Part shown: piece by piece, positions 161 to 23,774 of the stretch | Layout: each line of letters begins with the position of its first letter | Numbering within the stretch: the stretch's first letter is position 1 | From: Okamejei kenojei | Taxonomy: Eukaryota | Assembly (NCBI GenBank): GCA_035221665.1 | Contig: JAVHYY010000119.1 | Location: 1 to 64,000 of the forward strand | DNA: 64,000 nt | Reading direction: 5' to 3' | The notes under the pieces: generated by a model | Seen by the model: only the letters and a program-made list of their open reading frames with translations | Told to the model about the DNA's origin: nothing | The model's database searches: none | Program-made: the position numbers and the translations under genes

Positions 161-429
161 ACTGGACATTGACACGTTGAGCAGGGACGCCTGTTTTTAA
201 ACGAGATAATTCCTGCGGTGCATAAATAAGTCGCAGGTCACGGACCTTACTGTGGCCCTCAGTGGGTGTATTCCACACCATATCTCCGCAGATCTGTAGA
301 CTGGAGCACAGAGCTTTCTCCAGCTGTAAGAGTTCACTACAGGGTTGGCCTGTGATTCACACCGCAGTGTGATGTATTTACCAGCAGGAGGGGCTGTTGG
401 GGCTGTGATCCTCACATTGATGGGAGCGT
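161..429 (-). CDS. Siglec-like gene: domain 9 C2-set exon (tandem paralog of domain 8), several indels
   Basis: ttctag|AC GCT CCC ATC AAT ... CAG T|gtaagt, 269 nt. Sequence YAPINVRITAPTAPPAGKYITLRCESQANPVVNSYSWRKLC.., then the frame is lost and ends ..PAQRVNVQ. No transmembrane exon is in the window. Confidence 0.8.
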
Positions 430-1254
430 CTAGAAAGAGAAACATTCCCAGCTTTCAAGACACACACACAGTGGAGCTCCCTGTATATTTACGTCTCTAA
501 GACTCACTGTAAGAGCTGGCCAAGCCGGCCATCCGCGAGTCACGGTGCCAGGCGGAAGAAGGCTTTGCCCGAGCCGGATGCTTGCCGCTTTTCCGGGGTT
601 ACGTCCGCGACCGGGTGCTGTTAGAGAGGGTCTTGTTTGTATCGTAGTGATTTCGTATATTTGTAAGGATTGTAACATCGTTTAGTTTAGAGATACAACC
701 CAGAAACAGGCCCTTCGACCCACCGGGTCCGCGCGAACCAGCGATCGCCCGATCACACACTAGAGATACAGTGCGGAAACAGGCCCTTCGGCCCACTGCG
801 TCCGCGCCGCCCAGCGATCGCCCATTCACACACTATTTCTGTGTTTAGTTTAGAGATACAGCATAGAAACAGGTCCTTCGGCCCAATGAGTCTGCGCCGA
901 CCAGCGATCGCCCGCACGCTAACACTATCCTACACACACTAGGGGACAATTCTTACATTTAGCAAGCCAATCAACCTACAAACCTACTGTCTTAATATTC
1001 TCTAAGACTCTCTAATATTCTCTAAAACTCTCTAATATTCTCTCAAAGACTCTAATATTCTCATTCCTTCTCTCCAGAGATGCTGCCTGCCCCGCTGAGT
1101 CGCTCCAACACTTTGTGCCTACCTTTGATTTAAACCAGCACCTGCAGTTCCTTCCTACACAAAATGCTTTCCTTACATGGTGCATCTGTAGGAGTTCGGG
1201 AGAGTTGTAGAGTGTAGTAAAGATGGTAACGAGCTGGGACAAAGTGGTACTTAC

Positions 1255-1524
1255 ACTGGACATCGATGCGTTGAGCTGGGGATTCCGTTCCACCGAGAGA
1301 ATTCCTCGCGGTGCAGAAATAGTCACAGGTCCCGACCTCTACTGTGGCCATCAGTCTGTATTCCACACCATATTCCCGCAGATATGTAGGCTGAGTGCCA
1401 CAGAGCTTTTTCCAGCTGTAAAGAGTCACTGCAGGTTGCCCTGTGATTCACACTGCAGTGTGATGATGTATTCCCCAGCAGGAGGGGCTGTTTGGAGCTG
1501 TGATCCTCACATTGATGGGGGCGT
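1255..1524 (-). CDS. Siglec-like gene: domain 8 C2-set exon with compensating indels
   Basis: ctgtag|AC GCC CCC ATC AAT ... CAG T|gtaagt, 270 nt. Sequence YAPINVRIT..(ITLQCES)..YSWKKLC..DYFCTARNSLG..IDVQ. A +1 near 1491 and a -1 near 1434 leave a TGA in the read frame. Confidence 0.82.
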
Positions 1525-2608
1525 CTACAGGGAGAAGAAAAACATTCCCAGGTCAGACACACACACACCACACACCGTGGAACTCCCGCAACACACACAC
1601 AACAGTGGAGGATCCTTGCTATTTCTTTCCAATTTTCCCTATTCCAAAAAACACACCCCCATACATAACGAACCCCCCACTGTCTCGCGCTCTCCTGATC
1701 CCTCTTACTCCTCTCTGTCTATCCCTCCTCCTTACACCCACCCCCCAAACCCCCAATCTTATGAATCTAGGCCTTTCCCCTCACTTATAATCACCTCCCC
1801 CATCCACTCCCCTTACACTCCCCGCTTCCTTTCCATAGAATCCTCTCTCCTCCTTCTCTCTCTTTCTCTCCCCTTCTCTCCCGCCTTGCGGCACGCACGC
1901 CCTTTCGTCTGCACCTCCCTCACTCCAGGAGAAAAAACCTACGCGTTGTATAACAGGTATAAGAAGGAAGCGATGGAACAGGAGAGGGAGGGAGGGAGAG
2001 GGAGAGAGTGAGGAGTATGGGGAGAGGAGGAGGGAGAGTGAGAAAGAGTGTAAGAGGAGAGAGGGAGTGAGAAGGAGAGAGAGGGAGTGAGTGAGAGGTG
2101 GGAGTGAGAGAGAGTGGGAGGGATGGAGAGTTGGAGAGAGGAGGAGAGAGGGAGGCGAGGGAGAGAGAGTGGTGTTGGCTGCTGCCCGGTTCCGGGCCTA
2201 AGTCCGTGCACGTGTGTCCTGGAGTGAACATGCGGGGTGTCCACGGGTGACCTCTGGAGGCCTTCCGTGGGCGCGGGTCACCGCGTGTGGGTTCAAGTAA
2301 GTATGTGAAACAATGATTGTCATTGTTGTACTATATTGATTTTTTTATATAGTGCAATTGTTGATTATGGTTTGATGTGTTGTATTATATGATTGTGTCG
2401 AAAATGTTTTTGAAACTTAAAAAAAAAGGGTGAGAGGAGAGTGACAGAGAGGAGAGAGGGGGAGAGATGTAGGGAGGGAGAGAGAGAGGGAGTGGTGAGA
2501 GAGGGACGGAGAGGGAGTGAGGGAGAGAGGGAGGTGGCAGTGAAGAGGAAATACCGTTCCCTATAAGGGTTTGAAGGGTTTGTGTACGGGATGGTGGGGA
2601 ATACTCAC

Positions 2609-2889
2609 ACTGGACATTAACAGTGATGGTCGAGCTCACAGTTCCGATCTCGTTCCTCGCTGTACAGAGATACGGACCCGCTTGTTGTGGGGTAATTCTG
2701 TAGATCACCAGCGTCTGGTCCGAGAGTCTGTACACATAGTCATTGCGGTACCAGGAGTATCTGTTCACGGGTGGATCACTCACACGGCTAACACACGTCA
2801 GACTCAGGCGGTCATTCACTTCTCGTTCACCTCGGCGCCGACCTCCACACCATGACATCGGGACTCAATGTGAAAACCCTGGGGCTTAT
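2609..2889 (-). CDS. Siglec-like gene: domain 7 C2-set exon, frameshifted in its 5' part
   Basis: gtttcag|AT AAG CCC ... CAG T|gtgagt, 281 nt (3n+2). The 3' part reads LSLTCVSRVSDPPVNRYSWYRN..AGPYLCTARNEIG..VNVQ, but the entering frame stops at TGA at about 2816. Confidence 0.82.
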
Positions 2890-3149
2890 CTGAAACGTTT
2901 GGACAAGGAATGGGTACCAGGTTAGACAACACCATACAAGCTCCTCCATCCTCCGTCTCTCCTCCCTCCCTCCTCCCTCGCTCCTCCCTCGCTCCTTCCT
3001 CGCTCCCTCCCTCGCTCCCGCCCTTTTCCTCGCTCCCTCTCTCCCTCCCTCCCCTCTCTCCCTCCCTCTCTCCCTGCTCTCCACCCATCCCCCCCCCCCC
3101 CCCCCCCCCCCCCCGAACCACCATAGTCGATTGGGGTTACTCAGAGGTT

Positions 3150-3466
3150 TAAGTTCCGTTTAGTTCAGAGATACAGCGCGGAAACAGGCCCTTTGGCCCA
3201 TCGATTCACCAGCGATACCCGCCACACTTGTTCTATCCAGACACACTAGGGGGGGAATTTTACAGAAGCACCCCCCCCCCCCCCCCCCCCTATGAACCTA
3301 CAAACCGGCAGGTTTTGGGGTGGGAGGAACCGGAGACCGGAGAAAAACCCACGCGGGTACGGAGATAGAACGTGTAAACTCCATACAGACAGCACCCGTA
3401 GTCTGGATCGAACCCGGGTCTCTGGCACTGTGAGGCAGCAGCGCTACCCACTGCACCACTGTGCCG
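3150..3466 (-). mobile_element. HE1/V-SINE-type tRNA-derived SINE (representative of many copies, e.g. 9110, 19475, 24990, 26620, 30770, 49230, 55440)
   Basis: tRNA-like head with a GGTTCGATCC B box, the V-domain GTCTGTATGGAGTTT(G/A)CACGTTCT, and the tail GGGCCGAAGGGCCTGTTTCCGCGCTGTATCTCTAAACT. Confidence 0.8.
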
Positions 3467-4809
3467 ACCGACATTTTATACGTGGGGAGCCCGTGACTTA
3501 AGAATCTGATTGAATTTTTTGAAGATGTGACCAAAAAGGTTGATGAGGGCAGAGCTGAAGATGTTGTATACATGGACAACAATAAAGATTTCCAGAAGGC
3601 CAGTCATAGAGTGATACAGCGTGGAAACAGGCTCTTCAGCCCAACTTGCCCACGCCGGCCAACTTCCCCCATCTACACTAGTCCTATCTGCCCTCGTTTG
3701 GCCCATATTCCTCCAAACCTGTCCTATCATGTACCTGTCCTATGTTTCTTAAACGTTGTGTGATAGTCTGCCCAACTACTGGCTTCCCTACAGCTCGTTC
3801 CATGCACCACAACCTCTGTGTGGAAATTTGGACCCTCAGATTCCTTTTAGATCTTTTCCCTTCACCTTGAAACCAATGTTTCCTCTGGTCCTTGTTTCCC
3901 TACTCTGGGCAGAGACTCGTGGTTACCCGATCTCTATTCCCGAGGTGATTTTGTACACTTCTATAAGATCGCCCCTCATCCTCCTGCGCTCCAAGGAAAA
4001 GAGTCCCAGCCTGCTTCAACCTCTCCCTGTAGCTCAGGTCCCTCGAGTCCCGGCAAAATCTTCTCTAAACCGGTTCCAGCGCATTCCACATGGTAGGCTG
4101 CTCTGGAATGTTAGATCGCATGAGATCCCGGGAGAGAGGGAATGGATAGAGAATTGGCTCCATGGAAGGAAGCAGAGGTTGATGGTGGAAGGTTGCCTCT
4201 CAGACTGGAGGCCTGTGACTAGTGGTGTGCCTCAGGGTTCGGTGCTGGGCCCGTTACTGTTTGTCATCTACATCACAGATTTGGATGAGAACATACAGGA
4301 CAAGATTAGAAAGTTTGCTGATGATACAAAAGTGGATGGTATTGCAGATAATGAAGATGGTTGAGAAAAGTTTAGCTGGATCAGAAGAAGGTACAAAGTG
4401 TAACTCAGCAGAATAGGCAGCATCTCTGTGGAGAACGTGGACAGGTACAAAGTGCTGGAGTAACTCAGCGGGTCAGGCAGCATCTCTGTGGAGAATGTGG
4501 ACAGGTACAAAGTGCTGGAGTAACAGCGGATCAGGCAGCATCTCTGGAGAAAAGGAATGGGTGACGTTTCGGGTCGCCACCCTTCTTCAGACTCCCCTGA
4601 CTCTCAGTCTGAAAAAGGGTCTCAACGCAAATCATGTGAAAAAGTTTTTCCTTATCTCCGTTCTAAATGGCCGACCCCTTATTCTTAAACTGTGTGTGGC
4701 CCCTGTGTGTGACTCCCCCAACATCGGGAACATGTTTCCTCCCTCTAGCGTGTCCAATCCCTCACCGTTGAACTTTATCTCGGGAAGACATAGTCTGCGG
4801 GATACTCAC

Positions 4810-5082
4810 GCTTGCCGGTCACTGTGACTTCCTCAGATCGGCTGCTTCCCGCTGCATTGGTGGCTTGGCACACGTACTTCCCGAAATCCGCGTAGGATAT
4901 GGATGGAAACTCGAGATCACGACTGCTTCCCCTGTGGATTTCCGCTCCGTTTCTGTACCAAGTGTAGACTGGTGGATCAGCTGCGGTTGAACTACAGCTG
5001 AGAAGAACTCTCTCCCCTTCTCTCAAACTGTGGTCGATCAACCCGTTTACTCTCAGCGAGACCATGACGTTTCGGGGAGGGT
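4810..5082 (-). CDS. Siglec-like gene: domain 6 C2-set exon
   Basis: ttttcag|AC CCT CCC CGA ... AAG C|gtgagt, 273 nt, open. Sequence YPPRNV..EGERVLLSCSS..YTWYRNG..DFGKYVCQATNAAG. Confidence 0.92.
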
Positions 5083-5270
5083 CTGAAAACACAGAGAGAG
5101 ACACAAATAATAGGCAATAGACAAAAGGTCTAGCCAGCACCGCCATTCAATGTGATCATGGCTGATCATCCACAATCAGTATCCTGTTTCTGCCTTTTCC
5201 CCATATCCCGTACCTCCGCTATCCGTAAGACACATTATGAAGGGGGGGGGGTACATATTCAGCGACTTAC

Positions 5271-5568
5271 ACTTGACCTCTAGCATTCTCATTGTCCGGA
5301 CGGAAGAGGTCCCATTTGTGAACGTTGCCTCACACGAAACCGCCCATTGTCTTTCGTCGGAGCTCGGCATGAATTCCACCTCGCTGGAGTAGATCCAGTG
5401 CTGGTCCCAGTAAACGACACGGGTCACGACAGGGCGGAGGAGAGGCGGCTGCCAGAGGAGGAGAGGAACGTCGTCCGCGCAATAAACTGTGCAGGGAGCA
5501 GGTCAGAGACACCGCCCTCCCCTCCACCACCTGTCCTGGGTCGCCGATCTCCGGTGTTTCCAGTGCTC
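5271..5568 (-). CDS. Siglec-like gene: domain 5 (second d2-type C2) exon, +1 frameshift at about 5485
   Basis: caccag|GA GCA CTG ... AAG T|gtaagt. Length is 298 nt (3n+1). Removing one T from AGT TTA TTG restores SLTCSLHSYC..LLLW..SCEATF..LEVK. Confidence 0.85.
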
Positions 5569-5603
5569 CTGGTGAAGGAACGACAAGTTTAAGCTTCACA
5601 TCT

Positions 5604-5980: not shown

Positions 5981-6254
5981 GAATATGGGGAGAAGGGGAG
6001 AAGGCAGGAACGGGGTACCGATTGTGGATGATCATGTTGCATGGCGGTGCTGGCTCGAAGGCCAAATGGCACCTGCACCTGTTGTCTATTGTCTATTCTT
6101 CACGTTTAAATTATAATGTTTTATTTTTAATTGTCTACTGTATATCATGTTGTTATTTGCGAGTGGAGCACCAAGGCAAATTCCTTGTATGTGTACATAC
6201 TTGGCTAATAAAATTTATTTAATTCTATTATTCAATAAGGTCAAAAGCAAGAGA

Positions 6255-8693: not shown

Positions 8694-8700
8694 AACTCAC

Positions 8701-9042
8701 CTGACACTAGGAGATTTATGCCGATGGCATCCGACCATTTATCTGAGCCTTCAAGGCGGAAGAAATATTTCCCACTATCCGACGATCCCAGGTTCTGGAT
8801 CTCCAATGAACAGTTTTGATCTTCCATGCTACCAATAAAGTGCACCCGTCGTTTATAATCTGCCCCACTCTCGCCTGAGGTGATGTACACGCGTGTCCCG
8901 ATGTAGTTGTCGTCTTTAAGCCAAATGCCGATCCAGGGACCATGCTTGTCCCTGGGCACACGGAAGCGACACGGGATGGTCACGCAACTCCCGACACGGG
9001 CTCGGACGGAGACGGGGGTCCACACCGCCCAGCCGTTGCCCC
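8701..9042 (-). CDS. Siglec-like gene: second, internal V-set Ig domain exon (V2)
   Basis: tctttcag|GG GGC AAC GGC TGG ... TCA G|gtgagt, 342 nt. Sequence GWAV..GSCVTIPCRF..NCSLEI..KYFFRLE..KWS is a complete Siglec V-set signature including the Arg. Confidence 0.92.
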
Positions 9043-9649
9043 CTGAAAGAGACCAGAGGCAGAGTGAGAGAAAGGGAGACAAAAGCAGGCCAACCCAACT
9101 TCGGAGCGAAGGGTTCGATCCCGTCCACGGGTGCTGCCTGTGCGGAGTTTGCACGTCCTCACCGTGACCCTCGTGGGTTTTCTCCGGGCACTCCGGCTTC
9201 CCCCCCATACTTGGTATAAATGTATTTTTTTTTTTTAAGTTGTCCCTAGCATGTGTAGGATAGTGTTAGTGTGCGGGGATCGCTGGTTGGCATGGACTCG
9301 GTGGGCCGAAGGGCCTATCTCCGCGCTGTATCTCTAAACTACACACAGGACTAGTGGGGGTGAACAGGCGATCACTGGTTGGCACTGACTCGGTGGGCCG
9401 AAGGGCCTGTTTCAGCGCTGTATCTCTGAATTAAACACAGAACTAGTGGGGGTGAACGGGCGATCACTGGTCGGCGTGGACTAGGTGGGTTGAAAGACCT
9501 GTTCCAAACATTTGAGAAACAGTTGGACAGGTACATGGATACAACAGGTTTGGAGGGATATGTACCAAATGTGGGCAGGTTCAGTCGCTGGGACATGTTG
9601 GCCGGTGTGGGCACGTTGGGCCAAAGAGCCTGTTTCCACGCTGTAACAG

Positions 9650-9728
9650 TTTGTGTTGGGCAAAGGGTTGCATTGGGGGCACCAGGCCTCCCGTGTGACA
9701 GGGACCAAACAGGTCCCACTTGGTCTAG
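9650..9728 (+). mobile_element. Helitron 3' terminal fragment
   Basis: GGGACC-AAACA-GGTCCC hairpin (9701-9717), then ACTTGGT-CTAG|T. Confidence 0.6.
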
Positions 9729-9811
9729 TTAAACATAGAGCTAGGGGCACGGACTCAGTGGGCCGAAGGGCCTGTTTCCGCGCTGTATCTCTGAACTAAA
9801 CTACGACGAAC

Positions 9812-10087
9812 CGTAAACGGGCAGCTTGGTTTTCTCGGAGGTCGCTGGTCCAACTGAATTGACGGCTTCACACCAGTAGTCTGTGCCTTTAGTTAGATGG
9901 GTGATCCTGATCTTGTTTGTAGACGTCTGTGTTTCAGTCGTCTGGGATGATCCATACCAAGTCTGGTGCCACCTGTAACTTGTAACTAGAGGATTACTGG
10001 ACCCTACTGTACATCTGAGTGATAGATAACTCACTCTAGGAGAGAACGTGAAGGGAGAGAGGGTCAGGAGAACAGATCTGGGGGCAT
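9812..10087 (-). CDS. Siglec-like gene: domain 3 C2-set exon
   Basis: ttttcacag|AT GCC CCC AGA ... TAC G|gttcgt, 276 nt. Sequence YAPRSV..LSLRCTVGSSNPLVTSYRW..YWCEAVNSVG is a CD22/sialoadhesin-like C2 (SSNP, Y-x-C-x-A-x-N-x-x-G). Confidence 0.88.
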
Positions 10088-11399: not shown

Positions 11400-11735
11400 T
11401 GGCTGCTGACAAATTGTTTACCTTTTTTTTAGTTTGTGTTCACAAAATGAATTTTGGTTGACAGGTGACTGCTTGCTGCCCAATTGTTTGCCTCGCCTTT
11501 TTAAAAAAAAGTTTATGTTCACAAAATGAATTTTGGTTGACAGGTGGCTGCTTGCTGCCCAATTGTTGCCTCGCCTTTTTCAAAAGAAGTTTGTGTTCAC
11601 GAAATGGATTTTGGATGTCAGGTGGCTGCGGCCCAATTGTTTGCCTCGCCTTTTTCAAGAGTTGTCTTCACAAAATGGATTTTGGTTGTCAGGTGGCTGT
11701 GGCCAAATTGTTTGCCTCGCCTTTTTCAAGAGTTT
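11400..11735. repeat. 72-bp minisatellite, left part (about 4.5 units)
   Basis: Unit TTCACAAAATGGATTT(T/A)GGTTGTCAGGTGGCTGCGGCCCAATTGTTTGCCTCGCCTTTTTCAAGAGTTTGTG. Confidence 0.92.
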
Positions 11736-14700
11736 TTTTTTGTTTTGTTTTTTTTGTTTTTGTTCGTTTATTTTATTAGAATACAGTACAAACCAATACA
11801 GAGGCACCTAATTTTGGGTGCCAACTATGTCATAACATGATACATTCTATGTACAACCTCCAGTTTTATGTTTTTGAAAAGGAAATGAAAAAAGACAAGA
11901 AATAAAAGAGAGAAGAAAAAGAGGAAAAATAGATATTAGAAAATAGAAAAATATGAAGTGTGTATATAAGAAAAGAAAAAGTAGAAAGTAGAAATAGGAG
12001 AAACAGACCCTTAAAAAAGAAAATTTTCAAATTTTTTTTCGGAGATGTAATTCTACCCACGACCTGACCTGAAATCAGTAATCTTTACGGTACTGCTGCA
12101 TCACATGATTCCAAAAAGTCGATGAAAGGGGACCAACTCCTTAAGAATAGGTCATATTTATCTATTAGACGGAGTCTCATTTCTTCAAGGTGAACTATGT
12201 CTGTCATATTACTAATCCACATTTTAATAGTTGGTATAGCTGTATTTTTCCAAAATTTAAGTATCAATTTCTTTCCAATTATTAACCCATAATTAAAGAA
12301 TACTTTTTTGGACTTTGTTTAAAACTTGATATCTTCTACTTAATTATTCAAATATAATCTATTCCGTATTTGGTTCTATTCTTGACTTGAAGAGCTTTGT
12401 AAATATATCAAATATTTCACTCCAAAATTTATTCAACTTTATACATCCTACAAATGAATGTGTTATATTGGCATTTTGAAACAAACATTTATCGCATCTA
12501 GGAGAAACATTTGAGTAGAATTTATTCAACCTCGTTTTTGAATAATATAGTCTATGTAATAATTTAAATTGAATTAATGTTGTGCATTAATGGAACAATT
12601 ATGTGTGTTCATCAGATACTTTCCCATCTATATTTCGGAATCTTTATCATTGGTTCATGTTCCCAATCTTCTCTTAGTGCCTCTGTTGAGGGTAATTCTC
12701 CATTTAATATACTATTATAAAAATATGATATTAGTTTTTGTGAATCGGCCTTAATATTCATTGCTTCTTCTAAAGGGTCTAAAAATATAGTTTGAAATCT
12801 ATATATTTCTTCATGAAGTCACATATCTGTATATATTTAAAATATTGATTATCATTCAGTTTAAATTTTGATTTTAATTGTTGAAATGATAACAATTTAC
12901 CCAATTCATACATATCTCCTACTTTCCTAATTCCCAGTGTATCCCATGTTTTATATATGTTTTGTCGATATAGAGATGGTTTGAAGTGCAGGATTATTCA
13001 ATATTGGGGTTAATACTGATAGATTATTTAATTTCAAGGATAATTTTATTTGTTTCCAAATTCTTATTGTATTCTGAATAATTTGGTTCTTCTTATATAT
13101 TATACTATTCAATTTTATCGGTGAGAACAAGATCGTTCCTCTATCGTACGTGAACCACTCCTCTTTCTCCATTCTTATCCACTCCGACTGGTGAGTGGAG
13201 TTATCCAACCAGTACATTATGTTTTTTATATGCACTGCCCAGTAGTAATACGTAAAGTTAGGTAATGATAAACCCCCAACTTCTTTAGGTTTACACAGAT
13301 GCTTTCGTTGAATCCTGTGTGCTCTATAATCTCATATAAAATTAGTGATATTAGAATCTACTTTTTTGAAAGAATATTTTGGAATATATATTGGGATCGC
13401 TTGAAACAAATATATTAATTGTGGTAAGAAAGTCATTTTTATAGTGTTAATTCTACCTATCAATGAGCGTTGTAGCGTTTTCCAAAATGTAATCATAACA
13501 TTCAGTTTATTTAATAGTGGCATAAAATTGGCACTAAATAATGATTTGTGTCTTCCCGTAATTTGAATATCCAAATACTTGAATTTTTCTGTTGCAATTT
13601 TGAAAGGAAATTTTAATAAGTGTCTCGCATCCTGTGGTTTCAAAGACATAATTTCGCTTTTATTCCAATTTATTCTATATCCTGAAAAAGAACCAAATTC
13701 CTCGATTAGTGTTAATAAGGTGGGGATATTCTTTTGTGTATTAGTAATATATAAAAGAATATCGTCAGCATATAATGAAATTTTATTCTTTGAGTCCTTA
13801 GTGTTATATCCGTGAATATTCGGATGATTTCTAATCCTTTCAGCCAACGGTTCTATCATAAGGGCAAATAACAATGGTGATAAGGCACATCCCTGCCTAT
13901 TACCCCTTGATAAATAAAATTTTGGAGATAATGTAATATTAGTTAATTTAACCCATCTAATAAAATTCTCTCCCGTATTAAATTTTTGGAGTACCTTATA
14001 TAAATACTAACATTATACCTGATCAAATGCCTTCTCCGCATCCAACGTAACGACTGAAATATCTTCAATGTCCTCTTTGTAAGAGTACATTATTTTGAAA
14101 AGCTTTCTCAAGTTATTAAATGATTGTCTTTTGGGTATAAATCCAGTTTAATCTGGGTTTACCAATTTGTTAATCTAATTATTCAGTCTTCTTGCTAGAA
14201 TCTTTGCTAAAATGTTCTGATCCGTATTTAGAAGTGATATAACTGTAAGAATCCAGTTCCTCTAAGTCTTTATCTTGTTTTGGTATAAGCGTTATTGTTG
14301 ATTCAGCTAAAGTTTCTGGTAGTTTATTTCCAGTATAAGCCTGTGTGTATATGTTGAATAATCTTGGTACAATTGACTCCTGAAATTGTTTATAAAATCA
14401 TTGCTAAAACCATCTGGTCCTGGGGTCTTCCCATTTTTCAATGAGTTTATTGTTTGTTTTATTTCTTCACTAGTAATCCGTGCTCCTAATTCCTCTTGTT
14501 CCAAACTACCCAATTTAGGGAGGTTGCAATTATCTAAAAAATTTGTAATTTTACTATCATCTGTGTTTATTTTGGTTGTGTATAAATTATGATAAAATTG
14601 GGCAAACCTTTTATTAATATCCTTTGGTAGTGTTTGAAGCTTGCCCTTATCAGATTTAATTTTAGTGATAGTATTTTCCTTTTCTTTGTGCTTCAGTTGC

Positions 14701-17700
14701 CCCGCTAATAATTTATGTGGCTTATCCCCAAATTCGAAGTGTGCCTGTTTTGTAATTTGGAATAGTCTTATTACTCTTGCCGATAATATTCTATTGAGTT
14801 TATATTTCAATAAAGTTATCTTATTATGTTTATCTATGGTTGGGTCATTTGCATTGTCCAGTTCTAATAATTTTATTTCCTGTTCAACCCTCCGGTTCTC
14901 TTTTATTTTCTTTATTTTGAAAACTTTGATAAGGGATTATAGCACCGCGAATATATGCCTTAAAGGTTTCCCATAATAGCGATACAGAAATACCCGGCGT
15001 CTCATTTATCTCGAAAAAAATTTTGTTTGTTCTTTTATATACTCATAACCCTGCGGGTTATTTAATATTTGTGCGTTGAATCTCCAAAAAGGTTTTATAT
15101 CCAGCATTCCCTCGATTTTAAGTATAAAAGTCAGTGGTGAATGATCGGAAATAATACTATTATGGTTTAGTCGTATACGGGATTAATTTTGTATCCAATA
15201 AGAAATAGTCAATTTGTGAATAAGTTTTATGAACCGATGAGTAAAACTAATATTCCCTTCCAATTGGGTTTGCTATTCTCCAAACATCAGTTATGTTATT
15301 ATTTTTTATATAAGTATTTAAGAATTCACAGGTCTTAGTTTCCCTACCTTATTGATTTATCCAAATATGGGTCTATAACACAATTGAAATCTCCCCCCAT
15401 TATTATATTTTGATAATTATGCTCTGCAATTATATCTACTATTTTCATAAAAAATTGGGGGTTATCAAAATTAGGTGCGTAAATATTTATCATAGTTAAT
15501 GGTGTATTATAAATTTCTCCCGTGACTATAATGTATCTTCCCTCTTTATCAGATATAGACTTCTTTAATTTAAAAGGTATACCTTTCTGAATTATAATGG
15601 CCGTGCCTCTTGCTTTAGATGTGAATGCGTAGTAAGTTTGACCTATCCAGTTTGCCCTTAATCTGATCTGAGTTTGTTGTTTCAAATGCGTTTCTTGTAG
15701 AAAAGCAATGTCCGTGTTTAATGATTTTAATTGCGCCAGAATTTTACCCCTCTTAATTGGCTCATTCGCACCTCTAATGTTCCAACTACAGAAAGTGAGA
15801 CCTCCGGTGTTTATTGGACCATTATCTTGCATTGGCTATTATTACCAGAATGTATGATTCATGTGATGCAGCCAAGTAGCTCAAAATCCCGAGTCCAGGG
15901 TTGTTCTTCATAATTTCTGCACTAGATTTACATCTCCTGACACTATTAAACATAAATTAAGGGAGGGGAAAAGAGAAAAACATAAAATGAAGTGTTTATA
16001 AAGGTTGGTAAATCTACAACTCATAATAGTGAATAAACAAAAAAAGTGAATGTAAGTTATCAAAAAAGCGATATCTTACAAAAAAGCCACCTATGGTGGC
16101 TAAGATTAATTTTAAATTCACCTCCGTCGATGGAATTATGCACTGGGCTTTGCCCCCGTAATAAAATATCATCTAATGTTAGTCGGTTTCCTCCACTTAT
16201 AACGAAAATTATCATGTCAGTTCGATTAATAGCCAAAAAAATTTAAAATAAAATAAAGGAAAAGCAGAAGATTTAAAATAAAATAAAATGGAGTTGTTAT
16301 GGGTTAGAGTACCACGTCAGCAATCACACTTTTAATTCGCCTATATGTTAATTGATTCATAATTAATATTTAATATTTAGAATATCTGTCTAACCTCCCC
16401 CATCCTTCCTACTATATAGTTAGACATGTTAGTATAATACATTAAACCTTTAGCGTTAATTAAATATGTTGTGTATATATAGTTAATTAGTTAGTTAGTT
16501 ATATGCTGTATGTGTAAATAGTAGATCATATAGTAATGAGACGAAGGCAGACCATCAAAACTGTTTTTAATTCAAAAGAGAACAGTCCAATAATTATCAG
16601 GGTTGAAAAACTTGGTGCAGAGCCTGCGACTTTGAACATTCCATCTGTTGAGCTTCAGTTTTTTCAATACAAGATGAAGTTAGGTCTCTGTTATTTAGGT
16701 CTGTCTGAGAGACGTCTGAACAATTCTAATGTCTTGTTTGAAACAAAAAAGCAAGCGTATGTCTTATTAGTCTGCTTTTCCTTGAATTTTATTTAAAATC
16801 TCCTGGGCATATTTGCAAGCTGAGTCTGGATCCGTGAATGAGCGTTGCTTAGCATTGTACGTAATAAAACATTTTGCTGGGTAGATAACACCGTAACAAA
16901 GTCCAGAAAGTCCTTGTAGAATACTGCTTGCACTTTTAAACTGGCGTCTTTTTGCCAGTAATTCCCGAGGGTAGTCTCTGTAAAATCTAATTTGGAAGCG
17001 AACAACACGATGAGCCACATCTATCTTTGGTTTATCTGGCAGTTTGAAAACATCTTTAAGCAAATTAGTGATAAAATCACACATTTGAGAGCCATGCATT
17101 GCCCCCTCTTTAACTCCTATTATCCTCAGATTCTGCCTCCTTGACCCAGCTTCCAAATCTTGACATTTCCCATTCAGGTTTTTCATCCGCTCCAAATTCT
17201 CGTTATGTTCTTTTTTTAAACCAATTATTTCCTGACCCATCTGCTGCATTTCACCCTCCATCTCTTCCATCAATTTTTCCGCTTTTGTAAATTGCTTCAG
17301 CAGGGAGTCATGTTTACTGTTATAATCTCTCTGCATACTTTCCAATTCCTTAGCAGTCCTCGACTCCAAATCTTTGAACTGCTGGTTCAGAGATACCTAA
17401 AGCTCCTTTAATTGTCGATTTTCTCAGAGAGGTTAACCTCCATTGTGGATAGGTTGTTCTGCATTGTAGAAAGATTATTCTGCATTGTAGAATTCATTTT
17501 AGAAAATTGCTTCTAAAGATCTTTAGTAATGTCTTTAGTAATATTAACTCTTACCGTTTCTTCCAAGCTTTTTGTTTCTTACTCCCTTTCTTTCAACTCT
17601 TTTGTTTCAGCTCTTGCAGCCATTTCTACTGTTGATTGTTGAGACTCCAGCTCCTCTTCCAAACTTTCAGGAGTTGTTTCAAGCTCATCCAGAGGTTTTT

Positions 17701-17948: not shown

Positions 17949-19152
17949 AGTTTGTGTTCACGAAATGGATTTAGGTTCTCAGGTGGATGCGGCCCAATTG
18001 TTTGTCTCGCCTTTTTAAAGAGTTTGTGTTCACGAAATGGATTTAGGTTTTCAGGTGGCTGCGGCCCAATTGTTTGCCTCGCCTTTTTAAAGAGTTAGTG
18101 TTCACAAAATGGATTTGGCTTGTCAGGTGGCTGCGGCCCAATTGTTTGCTTCGCCTTTTTCAAGAGTTTGTGTTCACAAAATGGATTTAGGTTGTCAGGT
18201 GGTTGCGGCCCAATTGTTTGCCTTGCCTTTTTCAAGAGTTTATGTTCACAAAATGGATTTTGGTTGTCAGGTGGCTGCAGCCCAATTGTTTGCCTCGCCT
18301 TTTTAAATTGTTTGTGTTCACAAAATGGATTTAGGTTGTCAGGTGGCTGCGGCCCAATTGTTTGCCTCATCTTTTTCAAGAGTTTGTGTTCACAAAATGG
18401 ATTTAGGTTGTCAGGTGGCTGCGGCCCAAATGTTTGCCTCACTTTTTTTAAGAGTTTGTGTTCACAAAATGGATTTAGGTTGTCAGGTGGCTGCGGCCCA
18501 ATTGTTTGCCTCGCTTTTTTCAAGAGTTTGTGTTCACAAAATGGATTTTGGTTGTCAGGTGGCTGCGGCCCAATTGTTTACCTCGCTTTTTTCAAGAGTT
18601 TGTGTTCACAAAATGGATTTAGGTTGTCAGGTGGCTGTGGCCCAATTGCTTGTCTCGCCTTTTTCAAGAGATGGTGTTCACCAAATGGATTATGGTTGTC
18701 AGGTGGCTCCGGCCCAATTGTTTGCCTCACCTTTTTCAAGAGTTTGTTGTTCACAAAATGGATTTTGGTTGTCAGGTGGCTGTGGCCCAATTGTTTGCCG
18801 CGCCTTTTTAAAGAGTTTGTGTTCACAAAATGGATGTAGGTTTTCAGGTGGCAGCGGCCCAATTGTTTGCCTCGCCTTTTTAAAGAGTTAGTGTTCACAA
18901 AATGGATTTGGCTTGTCAGGTGGCTGCGGCCCAATTGTTTGCCTCACCTTTTTCAAGAGTTTGTTGTTCACAAAATGGATTTTGGTTGTCAGGTGGCTGT
19001 GGCCCAATTGTTTGCCTCGCCTTTTTAAAGAGTTTGTGTTCACAAAATGGATTTAGGTTTTCAGGTGGCAGCGGCCCAATTGTTTGCCTCGCCTTTTTAA
19101 AGAGTTTGCGTTCACAAAATTGATTTGGTTGTCAGGTGGCTGCGGCCAAATT
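17949..19152. repeat. 72-bp minisatellite, right part (about 16.5 units)
   Basis: Same 72-bp unit. It generates the 24-aa repetitive ORFs in the track. Confidence 0.95.
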
Positions 19153-20560
19153 GTTAGACTTGGCTTGGCTTTTAAAATCGTTGCAACAGTTGGCTTCCAG
19201 CCCAAGAATCCATTCACTGTGTGCGTGTGTGACTTGAAATGGATTGACTTGACTTGAAATGGATTGTTGGCCCTGCACTCACTGTGCTTGACTTGACCCA
19301 CAATACCCATGCTAGTCTCCAGAAACCTCCCTGCCCCCCCACCCCCCCACCACCACTGGGCATCAATATTGGAATTGGTGGAGAGGTGGAATATTGCGTT
19401 GGGGACCAGCCCTCCTGTGTGAAGCTGGGACCCTTAATCTAGCATATACATATATACTGTATGTGTGCATATTCGGTGGCGCAGCAGTAGAGTTGCGGAC
19501 TCACAGCGCCAGAGAACCGGGTTCCAACTTGACTAAGGATGCTGTCTGTACGGAGTTTGCACGTTCTCCCCATGACCTGCGTGGGTTTTCTCCGGGTGCT
19601 CCGGTTTACTCCCACACTCCAAAGACGTGCGGGTCTGTAGGTTCATTGGCTTGCTGTAAATGTAAAATTGTCCCTAGTGTGTGTGTAGGATAATGTTGGT
19701 GTGCGGGGATCGCTGGTCAGCGCGGACTCGGTGGGCCGAAGGGCCTTTTTCCACGCTGTATCTCTAAACTAAACTAAAACAAACATACCATAATTCCTTT
19801 TTTACTCTATCTGTTGGGTCGTCACATTCAGGACGATCTGGATTTTGTCCGTAACACTGTTAAACATCTTGCCATTAATTGTACATTTTCCCCAAACATT
19901 TGACCTCCCAAATCGCAACACCTCGCACTTGCTCGAATTAAACTTCATCTGCCATTGCTCTGCTCATTTCTGTATCTGATCTATACCACGAAGATTGTCA
20001 TAGAGTGATACGGTGTTGAAAAAGGCCCTTCGGCCCAACCTGCCCACACCGGCCGACATGGATGATGCCCCATCTACACTAGTCCCACCTGCCTGCGTTT
20101 GGTCCATATCCCTCCAAACCTGTCCTATCCATGCACCTGTCCAACTGTTTCTTAAACGTTGGGATAGTCCCAGCCTCAACTTCCTCCACCAGCAGCACGT
20201 TCCATACACCCACCACCCTCTGTGTAGAAAGGTTACCCCTCAGATTCCTATTAAATCTTTTACCCTTCACCTTGAACCCATGTCCTCGGGACAGAAAGGT
20301 GGGAGAGAGGGAGGGAGAGAGAGGGAGAGAGAGAAAGTGCAAGAGAGAAAGAGGGAGAGCAAGCATTATAGAAAGAGAGAAAAAGGATGGAGACATGTTG
20401 GGGAGAGAAAAAGAGAGAGAGAGAGGGGGAGAGAGAGAGAGAGAGTGAGGGTGAGGGGGGGAGAGAGAGGCGAGAGAGAGGGGGAGAGAGAGGGGGAGAG
20501 AGAGTGAGCATGCAACTAAGAAAGAGAGAGAGCGGATTTTGCCATGATTGTGTGACTCAC

Positions 20561-20848
20561 AGTTGATGTTCAAGGTGACGTTTTCCCCTGCAGACTCTCC
20601 GGGTGAACGAACACATCTCAAAGACCTCCCGTGGTCTTGATAGGAAGCCACGAAGCTCAGAGTGAGGCTGGTAGTCCAGGAGTTCTCAGCTGATCCTGGA
20701 GTTTCGGTCTCAGAGACTGGATCAAAATCATCCATCCCTCTCCATCTCAGGTGACCAGGGCAGGCGAACTTTACCGAGCAGGTTAGAACCACCTTATTTC
20801 CCTCGATGATCTCCTCTGGTGAGGAGATAGTCAAGAAACTGGATTCAT
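20561..20848 (-). CDS. Siglec-like gene: domain 2 (Siglec d2-type C2) exon
   Basis: ccgaag|AT GAA TCC ... AAC T|gtgagt, 288 nt. Sequence EGNKVVLTCSVKFACP..LRW..SLTLSFVASYQDHGRSLRC, with the CxxxxxC motif typical of Siglec domain 2. Confidence 0.9.
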
Positions 20849-21109
20849 CTTCGGAGAGAGAGTCAGAGCATCAATTAGTAGTTTTTCTCTCCCTTTTTTC
20901 CCTTCTTGAGAAGGACTTAATTCAGTAATTCAAGAATCAAGAGAGTTTATTGTCATGTGTCCCTGATAGGACAATGAAATTTTTGCTTTGCTTCAGCACA
21001 ACAGAACATAGTAGGCATTGACTACAAAACAGATCAGTGTGTCCATATACCATTAAATAAATTACATTTTACTCTGTATCGGAAGATGCAAAGAATTTTA
21101 ATGGACACA

Positions 21110-21830
21110 TTACATCAGGCGCTCCGACATTTTCGCCACCTCCAATGTGATCCCGCCACTGGCCACATATTCCCATTGCCTCCCCTTTCTGCTTTCCTCA
21201 GAGACCGCTCCCTCCGAAACTCCCTGGTCAATTCGTCCCTTCCGACCCAAACCATCCCGTCCCCGGGTACTTTCCCCTGCAACCGCAGGAAATGCTACAC
21301 TTGTCGCTATACCTCCCCCCTCGACTCCATCCAAGGACCCTGACAGTCCTTTCAGGTGAGGCAGAGGTTCACGCACCTCCTCCAACCTCATTTACTGCAT
21401 CCGCTGTTCCAGGTGTCAACTTCTCTACATCGGCGAGACCAAGCGCCGGCTCGGCGATCGTTTCGCTGAACACCTCCACTCAGTCCGTCTTCACCATCCT
21501 GATCTCCCGGTACCTCAGAACTTCAAGTCCTCCTCCCATTCCCAATCTGACCTTTCTGTCCTCCTGCATTGTCAGAGTGAGGCCCAGCGCAAATTGGAGG
21601 AACAGAACCTCATATTTCGCTTGGGTAGATCACACCCCAGCGAACATTGACTTCGCTAAATTCAGATAGCCCTTGCTATCCCTCTCTCTCCATCCCCTCC
21701 CCTTTCCCAGTTCTCCCACTAGTCTTACTGTTTCCGACCACATTCTATCTCTGTCCCACCCCCTCCCCTGACACCAGTCTGAAGAAGGGTCTCGACCACG
21801 AAATGTCACCCATTCCTTTTCTCCAGAGAT
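21110..21830 (+). mobile_element. Penelope-like element 3' fragment (GIY-YIG endonuclease)
   Basis: GTFPCNRRKCYTC, then (frame change) IYCIRCSRCQLLYIGETKRRLGDRFAEH. A related fragment lies at about 25860-26250. Confidence 0.8.
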
Positions 21831-21995
21831 GCTGCCTGTCCCACAGAGTTACTCCAGCACTTCGTACCTGTCCACATTCTCCACAGAGATGCTGCCTGAA
21901 GGCTGTGTTACTCCAGCACTTTATACCTGTCCATGTTCTCCACAAAGATGCTGCCTGGCCCGCTGAGTTACTTCAGCACTTTATGTTTGTCTTAC

Positions 21996-22349
21996 CGGAG
22001 ATGTTCAGCAGAACCCCTTCCGGTCCGGAATATTTCCCATCCCGATTGCTCTCCATTCGGAAGAAGTACCATCCCTCATCCCGCTTGGTCAGACTGTCGA
22101 TTGTCAGAGTGCAGTCCTTGTCTCTCTCCCATTGTTCTGGGATCTTTGCTCCTGGATGGCGGGGAGGATCAGGACTTTCCGGAGAGCTGACGATGAGGGT
22201 GCCGTGTGTCTTGTCATCCTTGAGCCACTGAACGGTTTTCAGCCGAGAACCAGTGGGACAGGAGAAGGAACAGGGAATCCGTACACAGGTTCCCACGGCA
22301 GCCATGACATCCCTCGGAGCCTTCACCTCCCACTGATCGGCAACCACAC
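21996..22349 (-). CDS. Siglec-like gene: first V-set Ig domain exon (V1)
   Basis: ctgcag| ... TCC G|gtaag, 354 nt, phase 1-1. Sequence DQWEV..TCVRIPCSF..DCTLTI..WYFFRME..KYS shows the Siglec pattern: two B-strand Cys, an E-strand Cys, no F-strand Cys, and the conserved Arg in FFRxE. Confidence 0.92.
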
Positions 22350-22351
22350 CT

Positions 22352-23302
22352 GCAGAGAGAGAGACAGAGTCACAGAGTCACAGAGTCACAGAGTCACAGT
22401 CACAGAGGCACAGAGGCACAGATACACAGTCACAGAGACACAGAGACACAGAGACACAGAGTCACAGAGTCACAGAGTCACAGAGACACGGTCACAGAGA
22501 CACGGTCACAGAGACACGGTCACAGAGACACAGAGACACGGTCACAGAGTCACAGAGACACAGAGTCACAGTCACAGAGACACGGTCACAGAGTCACAGA
22601 GACACAGAGACACGGTCACAGAGTCACAGAGTCACAGAGACACAGTGTCCAGAGTCACAGAGACACGGTCACAGAGTCACAGAGACACAGAGACACAGAG
22701 ACACAGAGTCACAGAGACACAGAGACACGGTCACAGAGTCGCAGAGTCGCAGAGTCGCCGAGACGCCGAGACACAGAGACGCAGACGCAGAGACGCAGAG
22801 ATGCAGAGTCACAGAGACGCAGAGACACAGAGACACGGTCACAGAGACACGGTCACAGAGACATGGTCACAGAGACACAGAGACACAGAATCGCAGAGTC
22901 GCAGTTACAGACTCACAGAGACGTAGAGACGCAGAGACGCAGAGACGCAGAGTCACAGAGACACAGAGACACAGAGTCACAGAGTCGCAGAAGCGCAGAG
23001 ACGCAGAGACACAGAGACGCAGAGACACAGAGACGCAGAGACACAGAGACGCAGAGACACAGAGTCGCAGAGACACAGAGTCACAGTCACAGAGACACAG
23101 TCACAGAGACGCAGAAACACAGTCACAGAGACAGACACACAGAGACACAAAGACACATAATCACAGAAACACAGTCACAGAGTCACACAGTCACACAGAG
23201 TCACAGAGACGCACAGAGTCACAGAAACAGAGACACATAGAGTCATAGATACACACAGAGTCACAGAGACACACAGAGTCACAGTCACAGAGAGACACAG
23301 AG
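22352..23302. repeat. About 950-bp compound (CACAGAGA/CACAGAGT/CGCAGAGA)n minisatellite
   Basis: Directly visible 6-8-bp units. The array abuts the V1 splice acceptor. Confidence 0.95.
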
Positions 23303-23718
23303 TCCAGAACCAGGGGCCACAAACAGTCTACAAATAAAGGAGAGGTCATTTAGAACTGAGATGAGAAGACATTGTTTTCACCCTGAGAATGGTGAGTCTG
23401 TGGAATTCTCTGCCTCAGAGGGCAGTGGAGGCCAGTTCTCTGGATGCTTTCAAGAGAGAGTTAGATAGGGCTCTTAAAGATAGCGGAGTCAGGGGATATG
23501 GGGAGAAGGCAGGAACGGGGTGCTGATTATGGATGATCAGCCATGATCACAGTGAATGGCGGTGCTGGCTCGAAGGGCCGAATGGCCTCCTCCTGCACCT
23601 ATTGTCTATGTTTCTATGTGTGCCCCCCCCATCCCAGTGTACCCCCCCCTGTCCATCCGTCCCCCTCTGCTTTCCCCCACGGTCCCCTCGGCCGGACCGC
23701 AGTGCGTGACGGACCTAC

Positions 23719-23774
23719 CCTGGGCGAGGGTCAGGAGTGCCCACAATAAAGTTGTCATCGTCATTCGGAAAGAT
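23719..23774 (-). CDS. Siglec-like gene: signal-peptide exon (MTMTTLLWALLTLAQ-G; ATG at 23764)
   Basis: Minus strand reads ttctag|ATCTTTCCGA ATG ACG ATG ACA ACT TTA TTG TGG GCA CTC CTG ACC CTC GCC CAG G|gtagg. It is a hydrophobic leader ending in phase 1, and it joins the V1 exon in frame (G+GT=Gly). Confidence 0.85.

What the first reader, a model, noticed from the sequence alone, without database searches (positions are those of the whole stretch)
161..23774. Siglec with an internally duplicated sialic-acid-binding module: V-C2-C2-V-C2-C2-C2-C2-C2...
Seen: one leader exon, then nine phase-1 Ig exons. Domains 1 and 4 are both Siglec V-sets with the FFRxE Arg, an N-terminal Trp, a G-strand aromatic (KYS/KWS) and B-E strand Cys. 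Each is followed by its own d2-type domain (CSVKFAC, CSLHSYC) supplying the inter-domain Cys. Only about 770 bp of mostly SINE DNA separates domain 3 from V2, with no transmembrane or leader exon. Known: Siglecs normally have one N-terminal V-set, and primate Siglec-12 has two adjacent ones. Inference: an old duplication of the three-domain head (the copies are highly diverged) gave a receptor with two spaced lectin sites. I do not know this architecture from described Siglecs.
Basis: partly seen in the sequence, partly recalled or inferred. Interest (0 to 1): 0.85.

Follow-up and report, generated by a model that had tools for sequence, protein, structure and literature searches.

The report
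Two-headed Siglec gene in a skate
The window holds a skate copy of a sialic-acid receptor gene, shared by sharks and rays, that carries a second lectin domain in the middle of its Ig chain; four of this copy's ten exons are out of frame as assembled.

Summary
The exon order is real. On the minus strand lie a leader, then V1, C2, C2, V2 and five more C2 exons. Both V exons are Siglec-type, and only about 770 bp of dispersed repeat separates domain 3 from V2.

The order is also conserved. Automatic RefSeq and UniRef models from at least 12 sharks and rays, named "B-cell receptor CD22-like" or "sialoadhesin-like", map collinearly onto the window. The full-length ones run L-V1-C2-C2-V2-C2-(C2)n-TM and end in a CD22-type ITIM tail. 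All of them join domain 3 directly to V2.

The lectin arginine is kept in 13 of 14 V1 and 16 of 16 V2 sequences. A predicted model of the Amblyraja V2-d5-d6 segment superposes on CD22 d1-d3.

- d5 has 1 extra base.
- d7 lacks 1 base.
- d8 has a +1/-1 pair that exposes a stop.
- d9 has three indels.

Real decay and assembly error cannot be separated here. I found no RNA evidence.

The three-domain duplication is only partly supported: V1/V2 and d2/d5 pair specifically, d3/d6 do not.

I found no paper describing this architecture. Many other multi-V Siglec-like models already sit in databases for bony fishes, a lungfish and turtles.

The parts
23719..23764 (-). Leader exon (ATG 23764-23762; 15 codons plus 1 nt; donor G|GTAGGT, phase 1)
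   Evidence: Sequence read. It aligns with the N-termini of the Rhinoraja and Pristis orthologues.
21996..22349 (-). V1: Siglec V-set exon, 354 nt, open frame, FFRME arginine, KYS
   Evidence: It is 73% identical to the Rhinoraja V1.
20561..20848 (-). d2: C2-set_2 exon with the extra Cys pair (CSVKFAC), 288 nt, open frame
   Evidence: (PF08205, 3.7e-9). It is collinear with Pristis residues 139-227.
9812..10087 (-). d3: C2 exon, 276 nt, open frame; weak donor ACG|GTTCGT with an in-frame TAG three codons past it
   Evidence: 76 of 90 residues identical to Leucoraja, no frame event.
9043..9811 (-). Intron between d3 and V2: three heads of a dispersed SINE-like repeat, an A-run and another repeat tail; no leader or transmembrane exon
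   Evidence: One search finds the repeat motif 23 times in the window against 0 expected.
8701..9042 (-). V2: internal Siglec V-set exon, 342 nt, open frame; good acceptor (tctttcag|GG) and donor (TCAG|GTGAGT); FFRLE arginine, KWS
   Evidence: It is 85% identical to the Amblyraja V2.
5271..5568 (-). d5: d2-type C2 exon, 298 nt; frame broken by one extra T near 5485, between CSLHS and YCADD
4810..5082 (-). d6: C2 exon, 273 nt, open frame
2609..2889 (-). d7: C2 exon, 281 nt; one base missing near 2818, which exposes a TGA
1255..1524 (-). d8: C2 exon of the YAPxxVRI type, 270 nt; +1 near 1492 and -1 near 1440, with a TGA between them
161..429 (-). d9: tandem copy of d8 (1.1-kb unit, 81% identical); +1 near 304, +2 near 264, -1 near 202; the strand-F Cys is not read

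Best explanation
The locus is a skate orthologue of a Siglec gene shared by sharks and rays. In the intact orthologues the protein runs leader, V1, C2, C2, V2, C2, then 4 to 8 more C2 domains, a transmembrane helix, and a tail of about 165 residues. That tail carries four ITIM-like tyrosines and a YEN(V/I/M) motif in the same order as in CD22.

Inferred mechanism: an inhibitory receptor displays two sialic-acid sites on one chain. One sits at the tip (V1). The other sits two Ig domains lower (V2), heading a V2-d5-d6 unit built like a normal Siglec head. Ligand binding would bring the ITIM tail to its targets, as in CD22.

What is shown here is the exon order, the Siglec nature of both V exons, the conservation of the order and of the key residues, and the fold of the inner head. 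What is inferred is sugar binding by either site, signalling, and expression.

This particular copy is not an open reading frame as assembled. d5, d7, d8 and d9 carry at least seven 1-2-nt indels. I take d8 and d9 to be really degenerate duplicate exons. The single-base breaks in d5 and d7 I cannot tell apart from assembly errors. The transmembrane and tail exons lie beyond the start of the window.
For: Identity of the domains:
- Both V exons match Siglec V-sets.

Conservation of the order:
- A search of 1.84 billion proteins with V2 gave, as best hits, proteins with two V-sets, the second at about residues 320-440.
- These hits are RefSeq or UniRef models from Pristis, Carcharodon, Heterodontus, Chiloscyllium, Pristiophorus, Hemitrygon, two Mobula species, Hypanus, Rhinoraja, Amblyraja and Leucoraja.
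- They map collinearly on the window, exon by exon.
- At the d3-V2 junction the window reads ...LPVY-G-GNGW; Amblyraja and Leucoraja read ...LPVYGGYGW.

Key residues:
- The arginine is kept in 13/14 V1 and 16/16 V2 sequences, and the strand-G Trp in 16/16 V2.

Fold of the inner head:
- An AlphaFold model of the Amblyraja d3-V2-d5-d6 fragment (pLDDT 82) matches MAG Ig1-3 and CD22 d1-d3. E-values are 1e-20 to 1e-22, target TM-score reaches 0.74, and rmsd is 4.3 A.

Tail:
- The orthologue tails carry the CD22-like motif series. They align collinearly with hamster and caecilian CD22 tails, though only weakly (E 1e-3 to 1e-4 against nine tails, about 20% identity).

Frame breaks:
- A frameshift-aware alignment places the breaks at 5485, 2818, 1492, 1440, 304, 264 and 202.
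- d8 and d9 differ by indels as densely in the exon as in the flanking intron.
Against: - I have no transcript evidence. No RNA run holds the stretch, and the four runs laid were contigs of related species, dominated by repeats, with no exon-to-exon joint.
- All orthologues are computational gene models.
- The d3 donor is weak (GTTCGT) and an in-frame stop follows three codons later, so a short V1-d2-d3 product is conceivable.
- Against real decay: every break is a 1-2-nt indel in a short base run. No nonsense substitution is seen once the frames are followed, over about 370 codons. The window has no excess of private amino-acid changes: 13, against 12 in Amblyraja and 19 in Leucoraja. Other unchecked notes on this genome report similar +/-1 breaks in conserved genes.
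- Against full function: differences from related-species contigs run 10 synonymous to 23 non-synonymous, which is weak constraint. The Amblyraja model ends by reading into the intron after d6.
Confidence: 0.75

Rival explanations
1. The gene is fully intact in the animal. All seven or so frame breaks are indel errors of the assembly, and the window encodes a working two-headed receptor.
For: - Every break is a 1-2-nt indel at a run of 2-3 identical bases, and no stop codon remains once the frames are followed.
- Protein divergence of d3-d6 from Amblyraja and Leucoraja shows no excess of private changes.
- Unchecked notes from other windows of this genome describe +/-1 breaks in a histone H3, an MHC class I gene, Ig V and C1 exons and a DIRS element.
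Against: - All breaks fall in four exons (about 1,120 nt), and five of the seven fall in d8 and d9. None falls in the other 1,580 nt of coding sequence.
- d8 and d9 differ by 20 gap openings in 454 nt. That is as dense in the exon as in the intron, and far above any plausible error rate.
- The Amblyraja model also stops after d6.
Confidence: 0.3
2. There are two separate tandem genes: a short V1-d2-d3 gene, and a V2-led CD22-like gene whose leader lies elsewhere or was lost. The two-V gene models in all species would then be fusion artefacts.
For: - The d3 donor is weak, and a TAG follows three codons after it.
- Several database models of multi-V Siglec-like proteins contain internal hydrophobic segments and look like fused neighbours.
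- V1 and V2 are not sister clades.
Against: - No leader, promoter-proximal ATG with a hydrophobic stretch, transmembrane exon or tail exon lies between d3 and V2.
- The splice phases match, and the junction peptide is conserved from skates to sharks.
- The same junction is modelled in at least 12 species, several with multiple isoforms, each with a single C-terminal transmembrane helix.
Confidence: 0.06
3. The whole copy is a dead unitary pseudogene of the skate lineage. The 5' exons look intact only by chance or because the decay is recent.
For: - Four of ten exons are broken.
- The ratio of non-synonymous to synonymous differences from related-species contigs is near neutral, 23 to 10.
- The Amblyraja model is a fragment.
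Against: - If the 9 or so indels were spread evenly, none falling in the first 1,300 nt would have a probability of about 0.003 (my estimate from the exon lengths).
- There are no nonsense substitutions.
- Protein change is not accelerated.
- Leucoraja has open d5, d7 and d8-type exons.
Confidence: 0.3

Closest known systems
CD22 (Siglec-2)
   Same: - The segment from V2 to the C-terminus has CD22's layout: a V-set, a d2-type C2 with the extra Cys pair, a chain of C2 domains with the Y-x-W motif, and a transmembrane helix.
- In the orthologues the tail carries four ITIM-like tyrosines and a YENV-type motif in CD22's order.
- The modelled V2-d5-d6 superposes on CD22 d1-d3.
   Different: - An extra V1-C2-C2 module sits in front.
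- Amblyraja also has a separate single-V CD22-like gene (P0202/P0204), so this is probably a paralogue and not the CD22 orthologue.
- The V-sets group with sialoadhesin-like V-sets, not in a CD22 clade.
Sialoadhesin (Siglec-1)
   Same: - It is the best solved-structure match of V2 (3e-12). The residues I recall as its three sialic-acid contacts (Trp2, Arg97, Trp106) are aligned and conserved.
- V1 and V2 fall in the tree clade that contains tetrapod sialoadhesins (support 0.84).
   Different: - Sialoadhesin has one V-set and 16 C2 domains.
- The one sialoadhesin tail examined (axolotl) is 36 residues long and has no ITIM.
Siglec-12 (Siglec-XII) of primates
   Same: As far as I know it is the only described Siglec with two V-set domains in one chain.
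   Different: - By my recollection, its two V-sets are adjacent at the N-terminus. Here two C2 domains separate them, and each V has its own d2-type partner.
- Siglec-12 belongs to the fast-evolving CD33-related group. The human protein has lost the arginine (PMC7876704, abstract).
Automatic models of multi-V Siglec-like proteins in bony fishes, a lungfish and turtles
   Same: - Of 162 proteins carrying Siglec V-sets (the best V2 hits plus their cluster mates), 129 had two or more.
- V spacings were about 120, 190-230 or 300-330 residues. Some had a single C-terminal transmembrane helix.
   Different: - These proteins have different repeat units, such as V tandems, (V-C2)n or (V-C2-C2)n.
- None has been characterised, and some look like fused neighbouring genes.

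Membership tests
Siglec family | V-set Ig domain with the conserved strand-F arginine that binds the sialic-acid carboxylate | tested here: met
   V2 FFRLE aligns with the sialoadhesin arginine. V1 FFRME aligns with the Siglec-5 YFFRVE. The arginine is kept in 13/14 V1 and 16/16 V2 orthologue sequences.
Siglec family | Cysteine pattern of the head: C-x4-C in strand B plus a Cys in strand E of the V-set, and three Cys in the following C2 domain (the intrasheet and interdomain disulfides) | tested here: met
   - V1 has GTCVRIPC and KDCTL; d2 has CSVKFAC and LRC.
- V2 has GSCVTIPC and QNCSL; d5 has CSLHS, then the frame break, then YC and VSC.
- This is the sequence pattern only; disulfide bonding was not tested.
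Siglec family | Type I membrane protein with ITIM or ITIM-like tail, or a charged transmembrane residue | not testable with these tools
   The 3' end of the gene lies beyond position 1 of the window. No window match exists to Pristis residues beyond about 1080. The orthologues have the helix and the ITIM tail.
Siglec family | Arginine-dependent binding of sialylated glycans | not testable with these tools
   This needs glycan-array or cell-binding assays.
CD22 (Siglec-2) orthologue | A single N-terminal V-set followed by six C2 domains | tested here: not met
   There are two V-sets separated by two C2 domains.
CD22 (Siglec-2) orthologue | Cytoplasmic series ITIM ... YENV ... ITIM ... C-terminal ITIM | tested here: inconclusive
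   Met in the Pristis, Mobula, Carcharodon and Heterodontus orthologues. The tail exons are not in the window. A separate single-V CD22-like gene exists in Amblyraja.
Siglec-12-type double V-set | Two adjacent N-terminal V-sets (V-V-C2...) | tested here: not met
   In the orthologues the V starts are about 300 residues apart, with d2 and d3 between them. In the window, V1 and V2 lie 13 kb apart with two exons between.
Sialoadhesin (Siglec-1) | One V-set, 16 C2 domains, short tail without ITIM | tested here: not met
   The orthologues have two V-sets, 9-13 C2 domains and a long ITIM tail.

The most novel reading that the evidence does not exclude
Sharks and rays have kept, since before their split, a bivalent inhibitory Siglec. 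On this reading, two working sialic-acid sites sit two Ig domains apart on one CD22-type ITIM receptor. That would allow two specificities, or simultaneous binding in cis and in trans. The skate copy in this window would be a live member whose apparent breaks are assembly errors or skipped pseudo-exons.
Probability: 0.35. Interest if true: 0.7.

Novelty: new variant of a known kind. Interest (0 to 1): 0.5.

Why it matters
Textbook Siglecs read sialic acid with a single tip domain. As far as I know, the one described exception, primate Siglec-12, has adjacent V-sets and has lost binding in humans. Here the second head is internal and has its own partner domain. Its key residues are kept across sharks and rays, and it sits on a receptor with a CD22-type inhibitory tail.

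If both sites bind, this is a natural experiment in how spacing and valency tune an inhibitory lectin receptor. It also bears on how CD22 and sialoadhesin are related. The family can be tested now with intact orthologues from sawfish, manta or white shark.

For genome annotation, these genes are currently filed under misleading automatic names such as CD22-like, sialoadhesin-like, MAG-like, Siglec-15 and hemicentin-2-like.

Tried and rejected
- **RNA evidence.** The look-up of sequencing runs found no RNA holder. The four runs laid were contigs of related species, 90-96% alike in the exons and dominated by repeats. They showed no exon-to-exon joint and no usable coverage of the break at 5485. 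Both tools are single-use.
- **Spliced transcripts in the protein database.** I looked for a Logan-derived ORF spanning d3 and V2. The only Logan hit (P0311) is an unrelated single-V protein.
- **Literature.** Five full-text searches and two papers read found nothing on elasmobranch Siglecs or on internal or multiple V-sets. Subscription journals are not covered.
- **Leader for V2.** The ATG upstream of V2 (MGGKPECPEK...) is not hydrophobic. The Leu/Ser/Phe-rich stretch before the acceptor is the translated polypyrimidine tract.
- **Alternative acceptor in d7.** An AG after ...gaacgag would restore the frame. It lacks a pyrimidine tract and would delete strand A, so I rejected it.
- **Relaxed constraint.** A relative-rate count gave no excess for the window.
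- **Joined model.** In some searches exon translations were compared with orthologues inside local scripts, with X or a lower-case mark at each junction or frame break, and nothing was restored.


Full report
**What is in the sequence**

The gene lies on the minus strand. A 46-nt leader exon (23764-23719, MTMTTLLWALLTLAQ, donor G|GTAGGT) is followed by nine Ig exons with AG/GT borders placed for phase 1:

| Exon | Coordinates | Length (nt) | Frame |
|---|---|---|---|
| V1 | 22349-21996 | 354 | open |
| d2 | 20848-20561 | 288 | open |
| d3 | 10087-9812 | 276 | open |
| V2 | 9042-8701 | 342 | open |
| d5 | 5568-5271 | 298 | broken |
| d6 | 5082-4810 | 273 | open |
| d7 | 2889-2609 | 281 | broken |
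| d8 | 1524-1255 | 270 | TGA at codon 26 |
| d9 | 429-161 | 269 | broken |

A local tblastn with the exon peptides finds no further Ig exon of this kind in 24-64 kb.

Both V exons are Siglec V-sets.
- V2's best solved relatives are sialoadhesin (3e-12), Siglec-7, CD33, MAG, Siglec-8, Siglec-15 and CD22.
- From memory, sialoadhesin contacts sialic acid through Trp2, Arg97 and Trp106. In the printed alignment the matching residues line up with Trp, FFR-LE and K-W-S of V2.
- V1's best match is Siglec-5 (1e-9), with YFFR aligned.
- Both pass Pfam's cut-offs for V-set and Ig_CD22, and d2 is a C2-set_2 domain.
- V1 and V2 are 36% identical.

The 769-bp intron between d3 and V2 holds three heads of a dispersed repeat, found 23 times in the window against none expected. 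It also holds an A-run and another repeat tail. It contains no leader or transmembrane ORF.

Four exons are not open.
- d5, d7 and d9 are not multiples of three.
- d8 is a multiple of three but has a TGA at codon 26.
- A frameshift-aware alignment to the Leucoraja and Amblyraja orthologues places one extra base near 5485 in d5, between CSLHS and YCADD.
- It places one missing base near 2818 in d7.
- In d8 it places +1 near 1492 and -1 near 1440.
- In d9 it places +1 near 304, +2 near 264 and -1 near 202.
- d3, V2 and d6 aligned without a frame event. The leader, V1 and d2 read open in their own frames.

**What it is**

A phmmer search of 1.84 billion representative proteins with V2 returned 881 hits at E 0.001 or better. 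The best hits are proteins with two Siglec V-sets, the V2-like one at about residues 320-440. That position is what leader + V1 + d2 + d3 predicts.

The sources name them as RefSeq or UniRef models:

| Species | Accession or id | Note |
|---|---|---|
| Pristis pectinata | XP_051901442 | 1270 aa |
| Carcharodon carcharias | XP_041037097 | |
| Heterodontus francisci | XP_067874681 | |
| Chiloscyllium punctatum | XP_072409498 | |
| Pristiophorus japonicus | P0159 | |
| Hemitrygon akajei | P0187 | |
| Mobula hypostoma | P0188 | |
| Mobula birostris | P0189, P0191 | |
| Hypanus sabinus | P0192 | |
| Rhinoraja longicauda | P0001, P0185, P0186 | |
| Amblyraja radiata | XP_032872344 | fragment d3-V2-d5-d6 |
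| Leucoraja erinacea | P0190 | partial, d3 to a d8-type domain |

Their automatic names vary: CD22-like, sialoadhesin-like, MAG-like, Siglec-15 and hemicentin-2-like.

These proteins map collinearly on the window, exon by exon, on the minus strand.

The window is 84% identical to Amblyraja and 82% to Leucoraja over d3-d6. Those two are 83% identical to each other. So the window comes from a third skate lineage, and the locus behaves as an orthologue.

The d3-V2 junction peptide is conserved. The window reads LPVY-G-GNGW, Amblyraja and Leucoraja read LPVYGGYGW, and Pristis reads LPVYDSYSW. No species shows a leader-like insert there.

**The full-length protein in intact orthologues**

After V2 come a d2-type C2 and then 4-8 more C2 domains. 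The last ones are d8-type repeats. A single transmembrane helix follows.

The tail is 164-169 residues long. It has four ITIM-like tyrosines and YEN(V/I/M), in the order seen in mammalian and caecilian CD22. The tails align collinearly with those CD22 tails, but only weakly (E 1e-3 to 1e-4 against nine tails, about 20% identity). The one sialoadhesin tail examined (axolotl) has 36 residues and no such motif.

An AlphaFold2 model was built for the Amblyraja fragment d3-V2-d5-d6, using 16 sequences (mean pLDDT 82, pTM 0.69).
- Its best PDB matches are MAG Ig1-3 and CD22 d1-d3.
- E-values are 1e-20 to 1e-22. The target TM-score reaches 0.74, with rmsd 4.3 A over about 315 columns and 28% identity.

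So the inner V2-d5-d6 unit looks like an ordinary Siglec head.

**Are both heads likely to work?**

Across 14 V1-type and 16 V2-type sequences:

| Feature | V1-type (14) | V2-type (16) |
|---|---|---|
| Strand-B C-x4-C and strand-E Cys | invariant | invariant |
| Strand-F arginine | 13/14 (Pristis MAG-like paralogue has Gln) | 16/16 |
| N-terminal Trp | 14/14 | 15/16 |
| Strand-G aromatic | Tyr or Phe | Trp, 16/16 |

Conservation of both sites across sharks and rays argues that both are under selection. Binding itself is an inference.

**Origin**

Profile-profile comparison of the eleven domains of the orthologue alignment gives:
- V1 and V2 as reciprocal best matches (score 184);
- d2 and d5 as reciprocal best matches (68, next best 39);
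- d3 matching d6 (89), d11 (88) and d7 (85) about equally, while d6 matches d7 best (113).

I built a FastTree of 345 V-sets from the hits.
- The V1 sequences form one clade (0.95) and the V2 sequences another (0.996).
- They are not sisters.
- Both sit in an 87-tip clade (0.84) that also holds tetrapod sialoadhesins and teleost sialoadhesin-like multi-V models.

The two heads therefore separated before the shark-ray split. Short domains and modest support do not let me choose between an internal duplication and a fusion of two neighbouring Siglec genes.

**Is this copy alive?**

*For real damage:*
- d8 and d9 are units of a 1.1-kb tandem duplication. They are 81% identical, with 20 gap openings in 454 nt. 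The gaps are as dense in the exon as in the flanking intron, which no plausible error rate explains.
- The Amblyraja model ends by reading past the d6 donor into the intron.
- The 33 differences from related-species contigs that the reads tool listed split 10 synonymous to 23 non-synonymous.

*For assembly error, at least in d5 and d7:*
- Every break is a 1-2-nt indel at a run of 2-3 identical bases.
- No stop remains in about 370 codons once the frames are followed.
- The window has 13 private amino-acid changes, against 12 in Amblyraja and 19 in Leucoraja, with Rhinoraja as outgroup.
- Unchecked first-stage notes on other windows of this genome report similar +/-1 breaks in conserved genes, including a histone H3. 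I use these only as a lead.

All these exons sit between phase-1 borders, so skipping a whole exon keeps the frame. Database models that lack d2 (Rhinoraja P0001) or d5 (Pristiophorus P0013) exist. Degenerate d8 and d9 therefore need not kill the gene.

My odds:
- d8 and d9 really degenerate: about 0.7.
- The d5 and d7 breaks real: about 0.5.
- The whole copy non-functional: about 0.3. The gene fully intact, with every break an assembly error: also about 0.3.

**Limits**

- There is no transcript evidence. No RNA run holds the stretch. The four runs laid were repeat-dominated contigs of related species without splice joints.
- All orthologues are computational models.
- The transmembrane and tail exons lie outside the window.
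Local scripts compared the exon translations in order, with X at junctions and breaks.

**Novelty**

Five full-text searches and two papers found nothing on elasmobranch Siglecs or on internal V-sets. The teleost survey PMC7226832 lists only Siglec-1, CD22, MAG and Siglec-15 and does not mention cartilaginous fish.

The sequences themselves are already public as automatic models, and multi-V Siglec-like models are common. Of 162 proteins carrying such V-sets (the best V2 hits plus their cluster mates), 129 have two or more. They come from carp, tarpon, Hoplias, lungfish, turtles and others.

I therefore rate this as a new variant of a known kind. It is real and conserved as a family, and of moderate interest. 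This particular copy is of uncertain integrity.

Noticed in passing
window 17949-19155 and 11431-11729: A 72-bp minisatellite (16.8 copies, 91% matches), plus a shorter related array. Both lie inside the 10.5-kb d2-d3 intron and give long spurious ORFs on both strands.
   Followed up: partly
window 22358-23308: About 950 bp of an (ACAGAGTC)n-type 8/16-bp repeat fills most of the leader-V1 intron.
   Followed up: partly
window 12950-17400: An AT-rich stretch (29-36% G+C) in the d2-d3 intron has broken ORFs that look like a LINE: endonuclease- and reverse-transcriptase-like pieces and an ORF1-like coiled coil.
   Followed up: no
window 32-470 and 1133-1567: d8 and d9 belong to a 1.1-kb tandem duplication that includes intron sequence. 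The copies are 81% identical with 20 gap openings.
   Followed up: yes
P0185 (Rhinoraja longicauda, 'hemicentin-2-like', 1505 aa) and P0186: One skate model has three tandem V1-d2 units before d3-V2. Another has a third, frame-broken V2 copy after d6. The skate locus is a rearranging cluster.
   Followed up: partly
P0009 (Pristis pectinata, 'myelin-associated glycoprotein-like', 836 aa): A paralogue on the same contig shares the V1-d2-d3-V2-d5 head but has a different stalk and tail. Its V1 arginine is replaced by Gln while its V2 keeps the arginine.
   Followed up: partly
P0004, P0010, P0012, P0023, P0027 and others: Automatic models with 3-10 Siglec-type V-sets exist in anchovy ((V-C2)x10), lungfish (7 tandem V), mormyrids, carp and softshell turtle. 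Some have a single C-terminal transmembrane helix; others look like fused neighbours.
   Followed up: partly
window 9812-9801: The d3 donor is weak (ACG|GTTCGT), and an in-frame TAG follows three codons downstream. Read-through would give a short secreted V1-d2-d3 product.
   Followed up: no
window 24091-24221, 30961-31141, 42998-43156, 49421-49552: Four N runs of 131-181 bases. None lies inside the gene, and the nearest is about 330 bp upstream of the leader. They were left untouched.
   Followed up: no
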